Positions 2,285 through 52,836 of a DNA stretch of 64,000 bases are shown piece by piece. Source of the DNA: Oikopleura dioica (taxonomy: Eukaryota > Animalia > Chordata); NCBI GenBank assembly GCA_907165135.1, contig OU015567.1, positions 5,270,001 through 5,334,000 on the forward strand, in the 5' to 3' direction. Position 1 is the first letter of the stretch, and every line of letters starts with the position of its first letter. The notes below the pieces were generated by a model. That model saw only the letters and a list, made by a program, of their open reading frames with translations. It searched no databases and was not told the origin of the DNA. Both the position numbers and the translations under genes were made by a program.

Positions 2285-4712
2285 ATGAAGCTGAATTTGG
2301 CTATTCTCTCCTTGAGCGAGGCCGGTCACTGGTCTCGATTCAGGGGCATGGGTTATCAGGTAAAGTTGCCAAGAGAAAAATAAAAAATTTAATTAAAATT
2401 TTTAGGTTCAAACTACCTCCGATGCGAATAAACTCCGAATCAATCGTGAGCTCTCGTACGAGAGAGGCAACGGATTCGGGTTCACCACAGCTTGTTCTGC
2501 CACCGACATCGCTAACAAAAAGCTCTCCAGCTCCTTGATCGGTCCTGAATCTATCGTCGGCGCAGTCAACTTCCAGGTAACCAACCTCGACGTTGCCGAC
2601 AGCTTTTGCTACGGAAAGAAAGATGACCAATTGCTGGACGTGTCGAAGTACACCTCCGGCTTCACCATCAACTCCTTCTTCAACACCGCGACAAACACCT
2701 TCTTTGGATCGACCAGCTATCCCTTCCAACCGAACGGCTCTAAAACCGCCGTCGCAAGCAATCAGATGAAGTACACCGCCATCGTTACCGATCCAAAGAA
2801 CAGCTCTCCATCTTTTAACGCTCCACCAGCCTGGTTCGTCAACCCTCAGCTTACAAGCTGCACGACTGGTTACTACCAACATTTGAACCTTCTGCCACTC
2901 GACCCCGAAGGCAACAAAGTCTCATGCAGATGGTCTACGTTTGCCGAGGCCGGTACTTTCTCACTCTACAGCGGCACCACCTTCATCGGCGGCAAGGATA
3001 TCTACCTCGAGCCAAACAACTGCGTTATCCGCTATTACCCTAGACAGGACACTTACAAGAAGAACCACTTCATCGCAATCCAGGTCGAGGACTTTGACTC
3101 TAGTGGCAAACGACTTCACTCGATGCCCGTCATCTTCCAGATCATCAAGAGAAATGCCTCTTGGAGCTACAGCTACAAAAGCGGTGACAACTCGACCGAA
3201 ATCGAAGATGAGCTCGTAGCCAGCGAAGAAGAGTTGAATCACAGCGATAGTGAAGAGGTCAACGAAGCTGTCCAGTTCATCCCTGAAGCCAAGCACATGA
3301 CTTACGACTTCTACAACAACTTGCCTGAAAACGAGAACTACATCACCGAAGAGGACAACTCGATTACCACTGTTTCCGAGTACCAAGAACCGAACTTGGA
3401 GGAAATCGAAGCCGCCGCTGCTCTTGAAGATCCCGTATTCGAGGCACCCGCTGGTGATTTCGATCTTGCGAGCTCTACTCCTTCTCTCTGCTCATATTTC
3501 CCATTTGTTGCGTACACTGGTTCCTACATCACCGATGTGACGGTCACTTCATCGAAGCAAGTCATCAAATTCTACATTCGAGAGGGCGCCCACACGAGCA
3601 AGGGAACTTTCATTAGCAAGTTGCCACGAAGACATGTTTATGGTCCTGACGGGCTCAAATGCGGTACTCCAAATACTTCCGGATACTCTCTTTGCGAATG
3701 GACGCCAAACAAGACCCAGCTCGACCAATACGTTCACTCAGTTAGCTGGTACGGAATGGATGCGACCGGTCGATACACTCGCTATTACACCAGACATTTC
3801 CGACTCAAGGATGCCACTACAGTCGAAGTTGCTTGCTCTGCCACCTCTGCCACAATCACCGCCGGCGTCGGCTCGTTCCTCCCCAACCTCTCCTCTTCTT
3901 ACTTCAGCAAGACCGTCCTCAACATCGGAACCTGCAAGTACACCTTCCCAAGCAGCGGTACCCAAACTCGCTCGATCAGTCTCGCTTCCTGCGGCGGCAA
4001 GTGGTCTCAGGGATCCAAGATCGCCGTCGAATGGGACGTCTCTGCAACTGATCCAACCACCGGAACCATCACCGCCAGCAGAGTGTTCAAGTTCAAAGCC
4101 AAGTGCGAATATGCCAGCCAAGTCAACATGATGAGCAGCGCTTTCAACGTCAAATACGGTGTCACCACAACTCAAATTTCCGGCTCTTCCACGGTAAAAC
4201 AAGCTCTTTAAACACTGGTTAACATTTTTTAAGCTCGATTCTCTCTTCTCACTTAGTCTCAAGGGACCTTCCTCTACCATCACTATTGGTAAGTCATCGC
4301 TCATAATCACGTGTCGTAACGAACATCTTAGGTGACAAACTCACTGGTACCGTCACATCCACCTTCGCCCCATCCGTCCCATACGATTACCAGGTAAACA
4401 ATATCTTCTTTCTACCAGTTTTTGATGATTTCTTAGATCGCCGCCTGCACCGTCTACGACAAGTCCACCAAGACCGGCAAGAAGTACACCGTCCTCGCCA
4501 ATCAGTGCGCTCCCCAAGCCGCCGTCGCCTTCGATAACAGCAAGATTTCCGGCACCAGAACCGCTCCACCAAGCTTCAGCTTCACCAGTTTCACCTTTGG
4601 CCCAAGCGACATGAATCTCTACATGGAGTGCGCCGTCAACGTCTGCCTCCGAGATCCAACCTCCAAGAAGCTGCTCAGCTCCACTTGTCTCAAGACCTGC
4701 TCCGGCAAATAA
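2285..4712 (+). CDS. Secreted protein with N-terminal Cys-containing domain, acidic linker and C-terminal ZP domain (oikosin/house-protein candidate)
   Basis: Signal-like start MKLNLAILSLSEAG. GT-AG introns near 2360-2405, 4193-4232, 4290-4331 and 4395-4437 keep the frame. The C-terminal half has a ZP-like Cys pattern (VACSAT...KAKCEY; ACTVYD...NQC...FSFTSFTF...LYMECAVNVC). No TM helix before the stop. Confidence 0.75.
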
Positions 4713-44801: not shown

Positions 44802-44857
44802 GACACGAGCTAAATATATTTAAACTTTTATTGGTTGTGATAAAAAAGGCAGGTTGG

Positions 44858-47856
44858 CTAAAAATTCTCTTGTTGATTTCCTTCTGCAGGTCGATAATTC
44901 TGTCCACCGATCCGAGCTCCACAGAAACAGTTCGCCTCGACGACTTTGAAATGTCAAAAAAAGAAGAAAAAGAGAAACAAAGTTAAAGTTTTCGACATTT
45001 TCCTACATTGCCGCAGTTTGCAACAAAATAAGGGTGGCCATTCGGGCAAGTGTACCAATGTCCTTGTCGCATTCCAGTCGCCTGTCTAGATTAAATCTAG
45101 TTTCGATCGTTACAGGAAAAGCTTACTGTAATACACCAGCAAGATCAGAAATCTCCTGTCGTGTAACAGGCTCAAAAGCTTTCGCTCGTTTCTGCTCACT
45201 TTCAAGCTGAGCATTCACACGGTCTTGATCTGCCTTGCGCTTTCCTCGAATTTCATCAGCTCGATCTCCAATCAACTGCTTTTCGAATTCCAATAGAAGT
45301 TGTTTCACTCATCATGGTCAGAAATTTTTTCAAACAAAATCTGCCTTTATAATTTTTGACGTTTCCTAATTGCTTTGTCTGGTCGGTATATTTTTCTTCT
45401 AGAGAAGTCGAAAAAGCGTAAAAATTTCCAAAAAGTTCAATCTTTCAAACGCTCATTTATGATTTCCTCGTTTAGATTCGTTTTTATAGAGCTTTTCCTT
45501 CAATAAAATATCTTCAATCGCATTCGTGTGAATCTCGCCAAGAACTCGAATCTCTCGACTTGCAAATTTGACGATGATCTCTTCCAGTGTTTGCAGAAAT
45601 ACTAGAATATCATCCTCGTACTCCAAATGTTCTCTTTCCAGTTCCCTCGAACGAATGTCTTCCAGCGACTTGTCGACCCTCTCCAAGTAGTCCAGCTGCA
45701 ACAAGATGATTCTAGCATCACTCGGTTGCAATTTTGTTCCGTTCACTCGTGCATAAATGCTGTCTTCATCAAGCTCAGTCGTGGCGAAAAACCTCTGCCG
45801 CTTGAGCTTCTCGAGAATCGACTGTTTCACTTCCTCGAAATTGACAGTCTTGGCCATTTCTTCCCTGTACTTGGCTTTGATATTCCCGTATTTTTTGTTC
45901 CAAGCGTTGAATTCTTTGTTGTACCGGAGGCAGCTGAGCATCGGGGTTTTGCATTTCGGGCAAGAGATCGCCTAGAAATGGGGATTATCCAACTTTTATC
46001 AAAGTTGGGTGTTTTCACCTTGAATTCACCAGTTCTGCATTCGTCCATAGTCGCTCGAACGTAATTGTCAAGAGCTTCAACTTCGATTCGATGACCACAG
46101 TCGGGGATGAAGACGTAATGAGATTCACCATCGTACTCTGAGATAAAAAAGAATGAAGAAAGAGAATAAGCACCCTTTCCTACCTTCTGAAATCATGATC
46201 GGATCGTAGAACATCTCCGAAACCTCCCTATTGCACCTCGCGCAGGATGCAGGAGAGTGCAGTTCCGCACAATCCGTATCATGCTGAACCAGCTCACATT
46301 TGTGCCCACAGCTTCTTCTTGCTTGGCAAGGAATCGACAGTCGTTGATGATTGCAATCTCCACTTGAGCAGACCTTTTTGCAGCCGCGTTCAGGGCATTG
46401 TTCCATGCACGGAACGCATTCTTCCCAGCAAGGATGGTCGCATTTCGAATGAGAGCAGCGCTTCGAACATTTTTGATCGCAAGGTGGGCAGACTTCGTGA
46501 CAGGGTTCTTGGCAAATGTGACCGCACATGAGCGTTCGACCGCATTTTTGAGAGCATTTTTCATGGAGCAAACCTTATTAACCGCGTTTGGGGCCGGTTT
46601 CCAACTCATCCATTACCTTTATTGCAAGTTCCGCAAGTTCCCCCGCAAGGATGCCCGCAGCTCAGGGTCTCTGCGCATTCCATAGTGCAGGATCCGCCAC
46701 AGGTTCCCGCATACATGGCTCCGCACTCGCGGCAGGGGTAGATTCCTGGTTCCACACAAGGTCCGCATTTTTCCGAGCAACGGTTTCGGCACTCGTGGCC
46801 GCAGGGCAGGTCGAGGGCGCAATCTTGGAAGCAGGTCTTCAGTGGGTTAAGGGTTCATTCGCTTTTTCAACGCTCAGAATGATCAAAAAACCCTTTCCTG
46901 ATTTTGGATATCTCCAGCAAAACCATAAGTTACATGTCCACAGTTGAGTTGAATCTGGTGCATCTGGCAGTTGCAAGGAGGACAGCTATTGTTGCATTCG
47001 CCACATTTTAGTTTGCAGGTTGATTTTCCGCAGTGACGGCAAGGTCGAGTGCAGGGTTTTTCGCATTTTCGGGAGTGCTGGGTATGATCGCCGCATTGGT
47101 TAGAGCATTGATGGCCGCAGGCGAGTTTTACATCGCATTTTCTAGTGCAGAAGCCAAGCTTAAATCATTCTAGTTAGGGGACATCTGGCTCCCTTTGAGC
47201 AAATACTTACAGAAGCACATTGATTTGTCCTCTTCCTACAGTTTCTGCAATCAAACAGCGTCGCATGGTCGCATAAACAATCCTCTGAGCATGGCCGGTT
47301 ACAAGCATGTCCGCAAATGAGCTCTTTTCCACATCGATCAGCACAGTGAGTTTCTTCAACCGGTTCGTAGCAGAGAGTCGTCTGCTTGTGGCCACAGGGC
47401 AGCATCTTTTGGATTGTATTGAAGCAGCGGTCGCAGGCGTCGGAGCAGAGTTTTTGGCAAGATTGCATTCCGCATCCAGAGCATTTTTGCTTGCATTCTA
47501 GTTTTACGTTTGATTCGGGTACAAAGATGGAAACTTACGCTCCATGCAGAGAGGATATTCATGGGTGAAATTCGGCGGATGATTTGGATAGGGACACTTG
47601 TGGCCACACATTAGCGCTCTAGAATTTCGAGTCAAAAAATGCCCTCTTGTTCACCCTCTAACTTCCCGCATGTATCCCCTTATTCAGCCAAGTAGAATAC
47701 TTTTTTTCGTGTTCTGCCTTTCATGGGTAAGGCTACGTGGCCTAAGGAAGAACAAGGGGATACCTGCAGGAAGTCAGAAGATAAACAAGAGGACCCGTTT
47801 TTAAAAATAACGACTTACCCTGAACAAGGCTGCTCAAATCCCATTCCAATTATCAT
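44858..47856 (-). CDS. ZNFX1-like protein: NF-X1-type zinc-finger array, RING-like domain, helical region and RZ finger; no helicase
   Basis: Repeated CGHxC...C units; SCARC...IPDCGHRIEVEALDNYV...SCPKCKTP..LRY; C-terminal GHWYTCPNGHPYFVANCG...ANCFCGARIGGQNY; stop at 44858-60, AATAAA at about 44826-31. Confidence 0.85.
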
Positions 47857-48155
47857 TTCCGCAAATTTTCTCTTCTTCTACTCTTCAATAAGCTCTTTTC
47901 ACAGTTGAAAACAAAAATTCTCCAGCGAAAATATGCAAAAATGAAATAAAAAGGAAAATATTCGCGTTTAAAATTCGCTATTTGCTGTTTCTGCTATCAA
48001 ATCGGACTGTTTTCCCTTTGATGAGTCACTGCGCGAAAAAAAGCTCGCACTCCTCCTTGATTTCAAATATCAGAAGGCTCCGATTTTAACCTTTATTAGT
48101 ACAGTAATATACAGATTCTCATAAAGACAGATTCTCTGATAATTTATTAAGCTTT

Positions 48156-51015
48156 TCATCTTCTTAGCAGCCATCTTTTTGCGTCAGAAAGTATCTTTAT
48201 ATACTCTAAAAACGATAGATGAAAATGACTTCTGCGGAGCAAAATCCTGACCTCAATATTTTTAGTGCTTAGTTTGTAGCGCAGAATCTAAGGAGTCGAA
48301 TGGTACAATTTTTATGTGTCCAAGCCACGAAGAATGTCAAATTCTAGCGCCTAAAGTACCTGAAAATGACAGGTCATGAAGCCCTGTATCTCCGAAAATT
48401 TTCGAATATACATATGGGTATCATTCGAAAGCCCAGCTGAAACTGTGTATGGGCACCTGGTGCGCAAGTTATGATTCTGAAAAAAAATTTCGATTGAAAA
48501 TTTTTTGTCTCAAAAAATATTTTTTCGCTTGGAATTTTCTCTTGCGCAGTGGGTGCCCATACACAGTTTGAGCTGAGCTTTTCAACGATATCAAAATCTC
48601 CATATAATTCTGAAAATTTTCGGAGATACAGGGCTTCATGACCATTTTTCAAAAGGGGGCCTTTATGACGTCATACGTGATGACTCAGACACTCAAAATT
48701 ATACCATTCGAATCCTTAGGCGTTGTTCTTTCGAATGAGCACAAGAAATATAGGGGCTAGAATTTTGCTCCGCAAAAGTCATTTTTAAGTATCAAACCAG
48801 CCTGGTCAAAAGTATATCTTGGTAAACCTCAAACCTTTTCTGAAACGAGTGTTCATCATCGCGTACACAATCGGATTGACGCAACTGTTGAGCCAGGTTA
48901 AATTGCTCGCCGCCATATGTAATCTTGGATCCAAACAGCCCTGGTTTCAAAATTAGAGTTATTTTTGATGATGGGAAGGACTACCTGTATCAAGTTTAAA
49001 ATGACAGACGGTAAGAAAAGCGAGATAAATATGGAGCAAATGGTGACCGAGCAAATGAGCAATTTTGTATCTGCTCGCTTTTTGTGACTATTGCGCGGGC
49101 CAGACGAAACTGGAGGAGTGAGGAGATGGGTTGATGAAGATTTTGCAACGGTGACGGTGGATTTTGAGGTATTTGGGAGGGTTATTGTTGATGCAGCCTG
49201 AAATAAGTTATGCTGCGGGCTTTACTACTGAAAAAATAAGAAAAAGAGGGTGGCCCCTTGTTCATCCTTGACTTCGTGCAAATGTGACCTTGTTCATCGT
49301 CTCACTTCCAACATTTGTTCACTCATTTGTTCGAAGAAAAATCTTCTGTATTTTCAAAATCACATTCGCAAGGCTATGTCATTCACAAGGCTACGTGGCC
49401 TAGCCTATGAACAAGGGCACACATGCATCAAGTAAGAAGATGAACAAGGTCACAAATTGCGACTCACAATTACACGAATTTAGGGATGAACATGGCCTTT
49501 TTTTAAAGACTCTATCTTACTTTTGAAAAGTTAGATGAGATATTTTCCGTGCTTAATTCGGGCGATGCCAGACAATCAGAAGCTGCCAGTAGTGTTTTTC
49601 CAGTAGCTGCTGAAGTGATTTTATTACCCCACTTTTTCAACCACAACCTTGATTCTTCTTTTAATACCTGAGTCGGCGTGTGAAACAGTTGATGTCGGAA
49701 ATTGACTGGAAGGTGGTTCACTTGAGGTTGTGATTTGCGGCTTGCTCTGCCGCGTAGAATTGGCAGATTTGATGCGGATTGTTCGCCTAAGTGTCGCGCG
49801 GATTCCCTTGAGTCGTTCACCGATGGTTTTTCGGCGAAATTCGGAAAAGACAGAATCTTCTGTGTCGTAAATACAGGGCTTCTTCGTCGCCTGCATACTT
49901 TGATAAGACCTATTTACGGGGAACTAGGGCACTTACGGTCGAATTAGCGGTCTTGTACGTCGCCATTTGTTCTTCCTGCTGCCGAACTTTGACGAAAATC
50001 GTCGAGTAGCAAATGACCATGAAGATCCAAGGAAGAAATTGGAAGAAAATCCGACAAAAGAGCATGTAGTCCAGCCACCAGATTGTCATTTCTGAGCGAA
50101 CGAAGGTGCTGAAAATGATGATTTTAATGATGATAGAGGGTTGGAAATACCAAAGAAATTGATCTTCATTCCAACTGACAATTGAATGACCGTTGTGTTT
50201 GAAAAGTACGGGGGACATGAATGCTGGAGCGATAAGCCAAGATAAAATCACCAAAATCGTCACCTAAATGAAGCGTTTGAAAAAAAATTTTCAACCAATC
50301 AGAAGCCTGAATTCGGCTTAACGGCCAATCAGCAGCTGAGTAGCCGACCACGCAAAATTTGTCGATATTTTTCTTTTTTAAGACCCTGAGTCAGGTTTTC
50401 TACACAGGTTTTCGAGTCGAAAATTCGACCCTTTTTCAAGAGTTTTCATGACTTACATTTCTTTTCGAAAAGAGCGTCACATACATATCGCGATGAATAA
50501 TGATAACAAATCGATTAAAAGTGATCGCCATCAGGCACACAATCGAAGTATAACCGCAGCAGAAGTAGACGAATGCTTGGAATGTGCAGCTTCGAATGGG
50601 CTTTTAGCGCGATTAATTTCTTAGAGCACTCATTCTGCGGTATTTTTATTGGCAGCGTCTATCCGCGGGTTCAAGCGAAGAAAAAAGCTATAGAAGTTGA
50701 TGAATCAACTCCATTAAAGCCGTTCCTGAAATGATCTGCTCCGAAGGGCCATTCTTTCTTCAAATAACCGGTCAAGTTGAACGGCATCATCAAGCTCGCC
50801 GTGACCAAATCGATGACAGAAAGATTGACAATGAAAACGTTGTAGGGCGTGTGCAGCGCTCGACATCTGTAGAAGGCCAAAATTGTCATTAAATTTCCGA
50901 TCGTTCCAACGACGATGTCAAAGGCGGCAATGGTGGATCCGAAGTAGCGGAACGACTCGATTGCTTCGCGGGAGACATTTGATATGCAGGGTTCTTCGAG
51001 GCTAGAAACAGTCAT
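48156..51015 (-). CDS. Class A GPCR, GPR84/Tre1-like, with a long third intracellular loop
   Basis: TM1 GTIGNLMTILAF, TM2 NLSVIDL, TM3 MAITFNRF and TM7 LHMAASNLTWLNSCVNPIVYAMMN, which is close to the recalled GPR84 HMLAANLTWLNGCINPVLYAAMN; last exon EYIKILSDAKRWLLRR*. Confidence 0.85.
48222..48786. mobile_element. Foldback element in the last GPCR intron
   Basis: Outer arms at about 48222-48315 and 48695-48786; inner arms at about 48375-48470 and 48541-48641. Confidence 0.7.
49250..49500. repeat. Repeat family D (CCTTGTTCATCC / GGATGAACAAGG, GCTACGTGGCCTA)
   Basis: Related intronic copies at about 40650-40735, 47640-47760 and 51025-51057. Confidence 0.65.
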
Positions 51016-52836
51016 TGATTGACAAGCCACGTGGCCTACAGGATGAACGAGGCCACAATTGGCTTCTTATTCCATCTTTTTTGATAGAAAGCGGACAAAA
51101 TTGCCGCTTTTTTAGTCAAAAATGATCAGAACTATCAAATTTTAGCATTTTTACGAAACGACTTGCGAAAATTTATTGAAAATTTTGGTCATTTTGACTC
51201 GAAAAACGACAAAATTGCCGATTTTATTTCAGAAAAATTTTCAAAATTGCCATATTTTGGTGAAAATGGTCGATTTTTCGGCCAAAAATACTGAAAATAT
51301 GGAAATTTTCTTCATTTTTGACACGAAAAAGTGTGATTTTTTTTTGTTTTTTTTTTTTGGTCTTAAGAATAATTTAAAAGCCTCATTCATCATTATTATT
51401 TTAAGATTTTTGCTTATAAAATATTAATATTTTTTCACTGAAAGCGCGAAAATATAATACCTGATGGATGAATTCATAACGGGTTCTCTTTCACTCTAAG
51501 CAGCATTTCGAGTCGTTTCACGTCTGAAAGAAAATTATGTGAATCGAACTGGCTGATTTGCGTTCGAGTGAGCCGGATGATCCTCTGCGGCTCATTCGAA
51601 TTTGGACAGACGCAGACTATAATTTTCGTTTTATAATCGCTCCATCTTCAAACATCTTTAAAAAGCTGCTTATATTTAAATATAAAGGAGAATATACTCA
51701 TAAGTGGAGCTTCTCAATTTGCTGGAAAATCGAAAGATAAAGTTAATTTTGGCGAAGAAAAAGAAGAAAATTGTCAATCAGAAATGGGGATTATCGTATT
51801 TAAATCAAGCATTTATGATGGTTTAGTTTATTCGACGGGGCATATTGATCACGTGTCTTAATTTTCGACTTGACAATGAAAATTTCTCCGCTTTTCGCGA
51901 ATTCTGCGATCGGCAGCCTGTTTAAAAACCTGAGTCAGGGATCTGAAAGAGCTTAAATAAAAAGCCGCAGAGCGGCTTTTATAAATTTTTAGCCGCAGAG
52001 CGGCTTCGCCAAAATATCAATGGCAATCCATTCTATATTCTTGCGAAGCCGCTCTTTATGACCCTGACTCAGGTTATTTTACACAGGGAAAAACACAGTC
52101 CTAGGGTTTTTATTTTATTTTCTATCAATTTGAGTATTTTCTCTTCATCTAGCAATATTTCTCTGTATAGAGGCATTTTTGAGAGGCATTTTCGGAGCAT
52201 TGACCATGCTCAATGCTGAGGAGTTTAATATTAAATTTTACAGTCTGGTCGACCTTTAGTCTCGAGCCGTTATTTCTGCGCTCTTCTCTCTCAGAATGAC
52301 GCTGTCTACGTAAACCCGGGTCAACTTAGCACGCCTCTCTCCCTCTTACTGAAAGAAAACAGCTCTTTATATAGCGTTGACTCTTTGACAAAGACCGATG
52401 CTCAGAATTTATCAAGAAAGAATAAACTCTGAAATAATAAAGGAAAAGAGAAGACGCGATGGCGGAGTTCAGAAAAGACTCAGATGTCATCTAATTATAA
52501 GATCGATTAGCCGATTTTCAAGAGAAACCCGTCCTTAGGGGCTCCCTCAGTTTAGTATAAATGATGAATTTTAAACTACGATCATTCAAAAAAAAAAAAG
52601 ATTTTTTAACAGGAGAAAAGGGGGTTTCCTCCTTATTTTCTCTAACAATTAAGATATCATCTTGCCGATAGATTTTTTCAACCCTTCTCTATTCAGCAGT
52701 TTATTCATATTTTACCTATAAAATCAGGTTTTCCCGGATTTTAGTTATAAAAATCCCGCTTCTCGTCGACCTCCCCCCTTAACTCTTGTTAGAAATGCAG
52801 TTTTTTTTCTAGAATTTTTGAAAAAAAGTGATAATG

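What the first reader, a model, noticed from the sequence alone, without database searches (positions are those of the whole stretch)
44858..47880. Helicase-less ZNFX1: a stand-alone NFX1-RING-RZ ubiquitin-ligase module
The protein follows the C-terminal half of ZNFX1 in order (NF-X1 fingers, the DCGH.IEV.ALD..CPKC RING-like region, helical region, RZ finger). It starts exactly where the UPF1-like helicase would end. An in-frame TAG precedes the ATG, and the GPCR stop and poly(A) signal lie only 200-300 bp upstream, leaving no room for helicase exons. ZNFX1 is an RNA-sensing antiviral and small-RNA-inheritance factor, and the RZ finger of RNF213 mediates ubiquitylation of bacterial LPS. A sensor-free ligase could be a decoy, an adaptor, half of a split gene or a new immune effector.
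Basis: partly seen in the sequence, partly recalled or inferred. Interest (0 to 1): 0.75.

Follow-up and report, generated by a model that had tools for sequence, protein, structure and literature searches.

The report
Helicase-less ZNFX1 paralog in Oikopleura
Besides a normal ZNFX1 gene, the small marine chordate Oikopleura dioica keeps a second, strongly conserved gene that encodes only ZNFX1's zinc-finger stalk and ubiquitin-ligase end, so the RNA-sensing helicase of this antiviral enzyme is missing.

Summary
On the minus strand at 44858-47856 lies a 12-exon gene whose 759-aa product starts a few residues before the first NF-X1 finger. It runs through nine CGH-type fingers, the Miz-like (RING/U-box-like) domain, a helical linker and an RZ finger.

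- **No helicase nearby.** None is found in the 64-kb window or in 9 kb upstream of the Bergen ortholog.
- **Two loci only.** The genome (Oikopleura dioica, 64.3 Mb) has exactly two loci of this module: this gene, and one full-length ZNFX1 on contig C1. There is no helicase-only partner.
- **The gene is real.** Against an Atlantic-lineage ortholog, synonymous sites are saturated (pS 0.78) while pN is 0.15. All 87 cysteines, the start codon and a GA-AG intron are conserved. So is a unique ~50-nt upstream element, although the neighbouring GPCR is inverted between lineages.
- **Origin.** A tree and a shared CxC zinc site in the RZ finger point to a larvacean-lineage duplication.
- **Twist.** The RZ catalytic Cys is kept, but the general-base His is Tyr in both lineages.

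Transcription and ligase activity are untested. This is a new architectural variant of a known family, of moderate interest.

The parts
47978..48028 (-). Conserved non-coding element about 125-175 nt upstream of the ATG. It starts with TGACTCATCAAAGGGAAAACA and is a candidate promoter or 5'-end element.
   Evidence: It is the only blastn match between 9.1 kb of Bergen upstream sequence and the window, at 90.6% over 32 nt. In the alignment of four sequences the block is conserved while its flanks are not. The 21-mer occurs exactly once in the 64-Mb genome. There is no upstream ATG between it and the start.
47878..47880 (-). In-frame TAG eight codons before the start codon.
   Evidence: The Atlantic ortholog also has an in-frame stop upstream of its ATG.
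47819..47856 (-). Exon 1, with the start codon (residues 1-12).
   Evidence: Phase-consistent GT donor. The N-terminus is conserved in L004, L005 and L006, where the ATG sits one codon further upstream relative to the conserved peptide.
47539..47618 (-). Exon 2: first NF-X1-type finger (CGHKC...).
   Evidence: It corresponds to the first finger after the helicase in full-length relatives.
47211..47497 (-). Exon 3: NF-X1 fingers.
46934..47158 (-). Exon 4: NF-X1 fingers.
   Evidence: The acceptor TTTAAG at 47159 restores the reading frame. It is 73% identical to the ortholog.
46617..46836 (-). Exon 5: NF-X1 fingers.
   Evidence: The intron that follows (46616-46574) is absent from the Atlantic ortholog.
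46184..46573 (-). Exon 6: last NF-X1 fingers, the best-conserved part of the stalk.
   Evidence: phmmer gives 84% identity to the O. dioica Bergen cluster holding CBY09492.1, and 45% to the full-length paralog. In the own genome it hits only this locus and C1.
46019..46137 (-). [quoted passage not shown]
   Evidence: It matches the family consensus around D-C-G-H...E-V..L-D. This segment has the lowest non-synonymous divergence in the gene, pN 0.057.
45498..45971 (-). Exon 8: second half of the Miz-like domain (CPKC, C457 and C460) and the helical region.
   Evidence: The AF2 model of the Atlantic ORF gives pLDDT 88-94 for the Miz halves, followed by long helices.
45442..45497 (-). GA-AG intron specific to this lineage; the sequence is contiguous in the Atlantic ortholog.
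   Evidence: The coding similarity continues in another frame after 56 nt. GA-AG introns are frequent in O. dioica (PMC7072748).
45345..45441 (-). Exon 9: helical linker. I first took this for intron. Its 3' junction is uncertain by a few residues.
   Evidence: It is conserved as coding sequence with L006. Either a GC or a GA donor is possible.
45127..45307 (-). Exon 10: helical linker ending in the helix that precedes the RZ finger.
   Evidence: 68% identical to the Atlantic lineage. The alignment of this helix to the ubiquitin-binding helix of relatives was made by eye.
45003..45085 (-). Exon 11: first half of the RZ finger (C717, H721, catalytic C728).
   Evidence: PF20173, E 1.5e-11, 44.1 bits against a cut-off of 27. 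The GA-AG donor is conserved in L006 and L007.
44858..44943 (-). Exon 12: second half of the RZ finger (C737, C739, and Y748 in place of the general-base His) plus the stop codon.
   Evidence: PF20173, E 3.1e-5. Splicing through the GA-AG intron restores the family spacing from the catalytic Cys to the next Cys. Tyr is also present in the Atlantic lineage.
44827..44832 (-). AATAAA poly(A) signal 26 nt after the stop codon.

Best explanation
This is a real, independently transcribed gene of Oikopleura dioica. It arose in the larvacean lineage by duplication of the 3' part of ZNFX1 and has been kept since before the O. dioica cryptic species split.

[quoted passage not shown] That is the part of ZNFX1 that a 2025 preprint shows to be a two-site ubiquitin ligase. 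The armadillo domain and the RNA-gated SF1 helicase are missing.

Most likely mechanism (inferred, not shown): the Miz-like domain recruits a UBCH5-type E2 loaded with ubiquitin, and the protein works as an E3 ligase that RNA binding does not gate. The RZ cysteine (C728) may still take ubiquitin as a thioester, as in RBR-type relay. Because the general-base histidine is a tyrosine (Y748) in both lineages, ester-type ubiquitylation of hydroxyl groups (RNA, lipid A) is probably lost or changed, which would leave protein lysines as targets.

Shown here: gene structure, architecture, absence of a helicase, conservation and origin. Inferred: transcription, ligase activity, E2 choice and substrate class.
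For: - **Architecture and gene model:**
- **No helicase:** none in the window, and none in 9 kb upstream of the Bergen ortholog. The closest SF1 helicase matches on the same contig lie at 13.0 and 14.8 Mb.
- **Copy number:** exactly two loci carry the module or an RZ finger. The other is a full-length ZNFX1 at C1:8.262-8.269 Mb with AAA_11, AAA_12 and RZ.
- **Purifying selection:** over 743 codons, pS is 0.775 (saturated), pN is 0.15, identity is 76%, and 87 of 87 Cys are conserved.
- **Conserved gene features:** the start codon and the upstream stop, the GA-AG intron inside the RZ finger, and a unique upstream element are all conserved. Meanwhile the GPCR neighbour is upstream in tandem here and downstream and convergent in the Atlantic lineage.
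- **Origin:** the helicase-less pair is sister to the Oikopleura full-length paralog, SH-aLRT 100. Independently of that tree, only the Oikopleura copies have C-x-C instead of C-x2-C in the RZ zinc site.
- **Functional frame:** the human C-terminal fragment is an active E3 with Miz and RZ sites. The zinc ligands, the nucleophile Cys and the general-base His are defined in bioRxiv 10.1101/2025.10.14.682297.
Against: - I could reach no transcript data, so expression, the 5' end and the three non-GT introns are inferred from conservation alone.
- No enzymatic test exists.
- The RZ finger is divergent: CGN instead of CGG after the nucleophile, C-x-C in the zinc site, and Tyr for His. It may therefore be catalytically dead.
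- I could not map the human E2-contact residue F1575 or the 'linchpin' Q1623 onto this protein, because no human or solved ZNFX1 sequence was available.
- The fold search of the Miz region gave only weak RING/U-box matches, Z 2.7-3.7.
- The tree joins long branches.
Confidence: 0.6

Rival explanations
1. The protein is mainly a partner or regulator of full-length ZNFX1. It would join ZNFX1 assemblies through the zinc-finger stalk and offer its Miz or RZ site in trans, either boosting the ligase reaction or acting as a dominant-negative or decoy that RNA does not gate.
For: [quoted passage not shown] The genome keeps exactly one full-length copy and one truncated copy. The RZ finger has lost its general base, so on its own it may be incomplete.
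Against: The armadillo domain that nucleates dimerisation in human ZNFX1 is absent. The two stalks are only about 35-38% identical and differ about twofold in finger number. There are no interaction data.
Confidence: 0.2
2. The protein is a non-catalytic zinc-finger scaffold or nucleic-acid binder, working more like the NFX1/NFXL1 transcription-factor relatives, with Miz and RZ retained only as structural zinc modules.
For: More than half of the protein is NF-X1 fingers. The RZ general base is lost.
Against: The Miz-like segment is the most constrained part of the gene, pN 0.057, and the RZ nucleophile Cys is kept in both lineages. The exon-by-exon Pfam scan found no R3H or PHD/RING domain of the NFX1 type. 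The closest relatives are ZNFX1 proteins, not NFX1.
Confidence: 0.12
3. It is an untranscribed relic or pseudogene of a partial duplication.
For: No transcript evidence was obtained. The reference Bergen annotation holds only a 210-aa mis-framed model.
Against: The reading frame is intact across 12 exons in two lineages whose synonymous sites are saturated. All 87 Cys are conserved, and lineage-specific introns are tolerated in frame. The start, the poly(A) signal and the upstream element are also conserved.
Confidence: 0.03
4. These are the 3' exons of a longer gene, or one half of a split gene whose helicase half lies elsewhere, or the apparent truncation is an assembly artefact.
For: The in-frame TAG before the ATG could in principle also serve as a 3' splice site.
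Against: No helicase similarity exists in the window or in 9 kb upstream in Bergen. The genome holds only one ZNFX1-type helicase. The same structure appears in four independent assemblies. The upstream neighbour differs between lineages while the ATG is conserved. The window contains no N.
Confidence: 0.03

Closest known systems
ZNFX1 (human; Naydenova et al., bioRxiv 10.1101/2025.10.14.682297), and the full-length O. dioica ZNFX1 at G000:C1:8.262-8.269 Mb
   Same: The order of modules after the helicase is the same: NF-X1 finger stalk, Miz-like C-x-H...C-P-x-C domain, helical bundle, then an RZ finger with zinc ligands and the nucleophile Cys at the family spacing. The window gene is 35-38% identical to ZNFX1 proteins over about 410-590 aa.
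   Different: It has no armadillo domain and no SF1 helicase, so no RNA gate. It has about half as many CGH motifs as the O. dioica full-length copy, about 9 against about 19. The RZ general-base His is Tyr, and the CGG after the nucleophile is CGN or CGR.
C. elegans ZNFX-1
   Same: It is another natural ZNFX1 that lacks one of the family's modules (the preprint's statement).
   Different: According to the preprint the worm protein keeps the helicase and lacks the RZ domain. Here the helicase is lost and the RZ finger is kept. I did not examine the worm sequence.
RNF213 RZ finger
   Same: It shares the RZ-type zinc finger (PF20173) with a Cys nucleophile.
   Different: There is no dynein-like AAA core and no canonical RING. 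The general-base His, linked in the preprint's discussion to hydroxyl (ester) ubiquitylation, is absent here.
NFX1 / NFXL1 / Drosophila shuttle craft
   Same: Arrays of NF-X1-type Cys/His fingers.
   Different: The exon scans found no R3H domain and no N-terminal PHD/RING. Miz-like and RZ domains are present, and the nearest relatives by phmmer are ZNFX1 proteins.
RBR-type E3 ligases (an analogy of mechanism only)
   Same: An E2-binding RING-like domain is combined with a second domain that carries a catalytic Cys. This is the preprint's own analogy for ZNFX1.
   Different: The folds and sequences are unrelated, and relay has not been shown for this protein.

Membership tests
ZNFX1 (full architecture) | UPF1-like SF1 helicase (Pfam AAA_11 + AAA_12) N-terminal to the fingers | tested here: not met
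   tblastn of the full-length paralog against the window gives no hit outside 44861-47504. There are none in 9 kb upstream in Bergen. The genome-wide AAA_11 and AAA_12 matches on C5 lie more than 7 Mb away.
ZNFX1 (C-terminal module) | Array of NF-X1-type zinc fingers directly after the helicase boundary | tested here: met
   There are nine CGH motifs in residues 17-376, and eight overlapping matches to the NF-X1 spacing pattern. The array is homologous to ZNFX1 stalks by phmmer and tblastn. Caveat: the exon-by-exon Pfam scan at E<=1 returned no finger family, and the ZNFX1 fragments scanned at E<=0.001 showed none either.
ZNFX1 (C-terminal module) | [quoted passage not shown] C-x2-C) in the conserved D-C-x-H..E...L-D...C-P-x-C-K-T-P context | tested here: met
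   C427, H429, C457 and C460 lie within the family consensus seen in about 60 relatives. This is the most constrained segment of the gene.
ZNFX1 (C-terminal module) | RING/U-box-like cross-brace fold of the Miz domain | tested here: inconclusive
   I made an AF2 model of the Atlantic ORF, which carries 12 intron-encoded residues. Both halves have pLDDT 88-94. Foldseek finds many RING domains, but only at E>=2. VIA-align gives Z 2.7-3.7 to RING and U-box chains.
ZNFX1 (C-terminal module) | E2-contact Phe (human F1575) and linchpin Gln (human Q1623) of the Miz domain | not testable with these tools
   No human or solved ZNFX1 sequence was available to map the numbering.
RZ finger (PF20173) | Match to the family profile above the curated cut-off | tested here: met
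   Exon 11 alone scores 44.1 bits against a cut-off of 27. Exon 12 scores 24 bits for profile positions 31-53. The own-genome scan gives 41.6 bits.
RZ finger (PF20173) | Zinc ligands C, H, C, C and the nucleophile Cys at the family spacing (human C1849, H1853, C1860, C1869, C1872) | tested here: met
   C717, H721, C728 (+11) and C737 (+20) fit the spacing. The last ligand is at +22 instead of +23 (C-x-C), as in the O. dioica full-length copy.
RZ finger (PF20173) | General-base histidine after I-G-G-x-x (human H1881) | tested here: not met
   It is Tyr in the window (Y748) and in the Atlantic lineage. It is His in 44 of 47 relatives and in the C1 paralog.
RZ finger (PF20173) | Hydrophobic residue of the ubiquitin-binding helix before the finger (human I1835) | tested here: inconclusive
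   Relatives have I, V or L at position -14 in 60 of about 66 sequences. In the window a Leu fits only after allowing a 4-residue insertion, and that alignment was made by eye.
NFX1 / NFXL1 transcription factors | R3H domain and N-terminal PHD/RING next to the fingers | tested here: not met
   No such family appears in the exon-by-exon Pfam scan at E<=1.
E3 ubiquitin ligase (activity) | E2-dependent ubiquitin transfer | not testable with these tools
   This needs recombinant protein. Only the human C-terminal fragment has been assayed.

The most novel reading that the evidence does not exclude
O. dioica has turned the ZNFX1 ligase end into a free-standing immune or RNA-granule effector. It would either ubiquitylate targets without any RNA gate, or dock onto full-length ZNFX1 polymers as a trans-acting second catalytic subunit. 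In this reading the His-to-Tyr change in the RZ finger retunes the chemistry from hydroxyl (ester) targets to other acceptors. That would be a natural separation-of-function allele of a human immunodeficiency gene in a tractable chordate.
Probability: 0.2. Interest if true: 0.7.

Novelty: new variant of a known kind. Interest (0 to 1): 0.45.

Why it matters
ZNFX1 couples RNA sensing by a helicase to a two-site ubiquitin ligase, and how the two halves depend on each other is an open question (bioRxiv 10.1101/2025.10.14.682297). Here evolution has kept the ligase half alone, under strong constraint, next to an intact full-length copy. It has also changed the one RZ residue that the preprint links to ester-type ubiquitylation. 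This offers a natural test of what the ZNFX1 E3 module does without its sensor.

The case also corrects the record. The gene is present in the public O. dioica annotation only as a 210-aa mis-framed 'unnamed protein product'. The short RZ-only proteins I checked in other animals turned out to be partial or split gene models, or suspect ones.

Tried and rejected
1. **My first exon 8-9 model was wrong.** It used one 159-nt GA-AG intron and gave 737 aa. Comparison with L006 showed conserved coding sequence inside that 'intron'. The revised model has 12 exons and 759 aa. The donor of the intron at 45344-45308 (GC or GA) stays unresolved.
2. **The Pfam scan of single exons found no NF-X1 finger family.** The two weak hits, Kazal_3 and DBL_C, are noise.
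3. **PDB sequence searches** with exons 6 and 8 found no ZNFX1 entry, so human residue numbers could be mapped only by motif spacing.
4. **Helicase-less relatives elsewhere.**
   - Mid-length hits of the representative search mostly start inside AAA_12, so they are fragments.
   - P0051 (757 aa) starts at a splice acceptor on a 3-kb contig.
   - Aromia P0052 has a same-strand AAA_11/AAA_12 gene model directly upstream, so it is a split model.
   - Phaedon P0173 spans 134 kb.
   - None of these is a convincing second case. My survey was small and does not show that the Oikopleura gene is unique.
5. **Looking up the L006 ORF** in other contigs gave nothing new. One metagenome scan supplied the missing 3' end as L007.
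6. **Fold searches** of the Miz-plus-helical model were not significant.
7. **Literature searches** for ZNFX1 with Oikopleura, or for helicase-less paralogs, found nothing relevant.
8. **The operators' rule on human contigs did not apply.** The window is Oikopleura dioica, not human.
Full report
**What is there**

The window has no N. It is G000:C5:5270001-5334000 of a 64.28-Mb genome in 19 contigs. A multi-exon gene lies on the minus strand between 47856 and 44858.

My final model has 12 exons: 47856-47819, 47618-47539, 47497-47211, 47158-46934, 46836-46617, 46573-46184, 46137-46019, 45971-45498, 45441-45345, 45307-45127, 45085-45003 and 44943-44858. It gives one open frame of 759 codons. There are eight GT-AG introns of 41-200 nt, two GA-AG introns and one uncertain GC-AG intron. 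GA-AG introns are a known peculiarity of Oikopleura dioica (PMC7072748).

An AATAAA follows the stop codon by 26 nt.

**Organism**

phmmer of exon 6 against 1.84 billion representatives gave as best hit a cluster 84% identical to the query. It contains CBY09492.1 / E4XE89_OIKDI of O. dioica. The second hit is the O. dioica protein CBY37749.1. So the window is O. dioica of a lineage diverged from the Bergen reference. It is not human DNA.

**Architecture**

- **RZ finger.** Exons 11 and 12 carry it: PF20173, 44.1 bits on exon 11 alone against a cut-off of 27, and profile positions 31-53 on exon 12.
- **Finger stalk.** Residues 17-376 hold nine CGH motifs with NF-X1-type spacing.
- **N-terminus.** The first 40 residues correspond to the first finger after the helicase in full-length proteins. 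The protein therefore begins at the helicase/stalk boundary.

**No helicase**

- tblastn with every open piece of the full-length paralog hit the window only at 44861-47504.
- Pfam AAA_11 and AAA_12 searches of the whole genome found nothing on C5 closer than 13.0 Mb.
- The genome has a complete ZNFX1 on C1, with AAA_11 at 8262845, AAA_12 at 8264303 and RZ at 8268740, all on one strand.
- Searches with exon 6, with exon 8 and with the RZ profile each found only these two loci.
- A search with the ZNFX1 helicase found no second ZNFX1-type helicase, only generic SF1 relatives at about 35% identity in one RecA lobe. A helicase-only partner therefore does not exist in this assembly.

**Is it a live gene?**

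I recovered four related sequences:

- the Bergen locus, L004;
- two short contigs, L005 and L006;
- a JGI metagenome contig, L007, which supplies the 3' end that falls in an assembly gap in Bergen.

All four show the same truncated gene. The start codon lies at the corresponding point, with one extra codon before the conserved peptide, and an in-frame stop lies upstream.

Over 743 aligned codons, synonymous differences are saturated (pS 0.775) while pN is 0.15. Amino-acid identity is 76%, and 87 of 87 cysteines are conserved. The Miz-like segment is the most constrained, with pN 0.057.

Two introns of the window copy are absent from the Atlantic copy (46616-46574 and 45497-45442). The GA-AG intron inside the RZ finger is shared. 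Splicing it as GA-AG restores exactly the family spacing between the nucleophile Cys and the next zinc Cys.

This pattern is not compatible with a pseudogene or an assembly artefact.

**Own promoter region**

The only nucleotide match between 9.1 kb upstream of the Bergen gene and the whole window is a block about 125-175 nt before the ATG. It is conserved in all four sequences while its flanks are not. Its 21-nt core occurs exactly once in the genome.

The neighbouring GPCR lies upstream on the same strand here. In the Atlantic lineage it lies downstream and convergent. A conserved start and upstream element in a changed neighbourhood argue for an autonomous 5' end and against splicing from exons beyond the GPCR.

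The conserved GPCR coding sequence ends with the NPIVY exon, whose stop is near 48808, about 950 bp from the ATG. Only two AATAAA hexamers lie 236-292 bp upstream. Most of the spacer is a nested palindromic element at 48214-48793.

**Origin**

A maximum-likelihood tree was built on 433 columns of the stalk, Miz and helical region. It did not use the RZ finger. It places the two helicase-less sequences as sister to the O. dioica full-length paralog with SH-aLRT 100. Long branches meet there, so the tree alone is not safe.

There is independent support. The last zinc pair of the RZ finger is C-x-C in the window gene, its Atlantic ortholog and the C1 paralog, but C-x2-C in all other relatives listed. 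I therefore read the gene as a duplication of the 3' part of ZNFX1 within the larvacean lineage, older than the split of the O. dioica lineages compared. An intron lies at nearly the same place in the Miz domain of both paralogs, offset by about five residues. That fits a DNA-level duplication but does not prove one.

**The RZ finger has changed**

The preprint names the human zinc ligands (C1849, H1853, C1869, C1872), the nucleophile C1860 and the general base H1881. Its discussion links the histidine to activation of substrate hydroxyl groups.

By spacing, the window protein keeps C717, H721, C728 (the nucleophile), C737 and C739. At the H1881 position it has Tyr (Y748; codon TAT at 44896-44894). 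The Atlantic ortholog also has Tyr, and the C1 paralog has His. Of 47 relatives, 44 have His; one full-length protein (P0006) also has Tyr. The CGG after the nucleophile is CGN or CGR in the two lineages. The hydrophobic residue of the ubiquitin-binding helix is probably a Leu, but that alignment needs a 4-residue insertion and was made by eye.

**Mechanism, as far as it can be argued**

What is shown is the architecture. What follows rests on the human data.

- The Miz-like domain is the best-conserved part of the protein and is the likely E2-binding catalytic element.
- The RZ Cys may accept ubiquitin in an RBR-like relay. Without the general base, ester-type transfer is doubtful.
- Lacking the helicase 'plug' mechanism and the armadillo dimeriser, the protein cannot be gated by RNA in the way described for ZNFX1.
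- It may act alone or in trans on ZNFX1 assemblies.

I give 0.6 to the stand-alone ligase reading, 0.2 to a partner or decoy role, 0.12 to a non-catalytic scaffold, and a few percent each to pseudogene and longer or split gene.

**Structure**

Searches were made exon by exon, by reference. The joined model exists only inside local scripts, where it served for length, alignment to fetched loci and proteins, dN/dS and the tree.

As a substitute I folded the uninterrupted 261-aa ORF of L006, which reads through a 36-nt intron. Foldseek and VIA-align list many RING and U-box domains for residues 8-75, but below significance: E>=2 and Z 2.7-3.7. The fold test is inconclusive.

**Novelty**

No paper in the library links ZNFX1 with Oikopleura or describes a helicase-less paralog. 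The public Bergen annotation carries only a 210-aa model that skips an exon and runs out of frame.

I checked the RZ-only proteins of similar length in other animals. They were last-exon fragments, split models or suspect models. I cannot claim that the architecture is unique to larvaceans, since truncated paralogs could exist in the large invertebrate ZNFX1 expansions.

It is a new architectural variant of a known family rather than a new kind of system. It is moderately interesting to people working on ZNFX1 and RNF213, mainly as a natural separation of the ligase from the sensor with a changed RZ active site.

Noticed in passing
window 48214-48793: A nested palindromic element of about 580 bp fills most of the spacer between the GPCR stop and this gene. 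It has 99-nt outer arms that are 75% complementary and perfectly complementary inner arms of 32 nt. It looks like a MITE or foldback insertion.
   Followed up: partly
window 48809-51066 versus L004:12211-14490 and L007:845-2054: The neighbouring rhodopsin-type GPCR is upstream in tandem with the ZNFX1-like gene in this genome. In the Atlantic lineage it is downstream and convergent, so a local inversion separates the lineages while the two genes stay neighbours.
   Followed up: partly
window 46574-46616 and 45442-45497; L006:1942-1947 and 3001-3002: Two introns of the window gene are absent from the Atlantic ortholog, where the coding sequence is contiguous. One of them is GA-AG. This is intron gain or loss between O. 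dioica lineages within a single gene.
   Followed up: partly
L007:330-560: In the Atlantic lineage the intron inside the RZ finger holds a palindromic insert of about 200 nt that is absent from the 59-nt intron of the window copy.
   Followed up: no
L004:10001-10822 (CBY09492.1, E4XE89_OIKDI): The public Bergen gene model of the ortholog is a 210-aa fragment that skips the Miz exon and ends out of frame. The 3' part of the gene falls in an assembly gap (N run at L004:10900-12054).
   Followed up: yes
G000:C1:8262581-8268960 (L003, L001): The full-length O. dioica ZNFX1 has about 19 CGH motifs in its stalk, roughly twice the number in the helicase-less copy. Its RZ finger sits in one exon and keeps the canonical CGG and His.
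   Followed up: partly
protein P0006 (1860 aa, ENA): One full-length ZNFX1 relative from an unnamed source also has Tyr at the RZ general-base position, while its cluster mate P0157 has His. The His-to-Tyr change has therefore happened more than once.
   Followed up: no
My own-genome search with exon 6 did not pick it up at E<=0.001, so it is not a close copy of this module.
   Followed up: no
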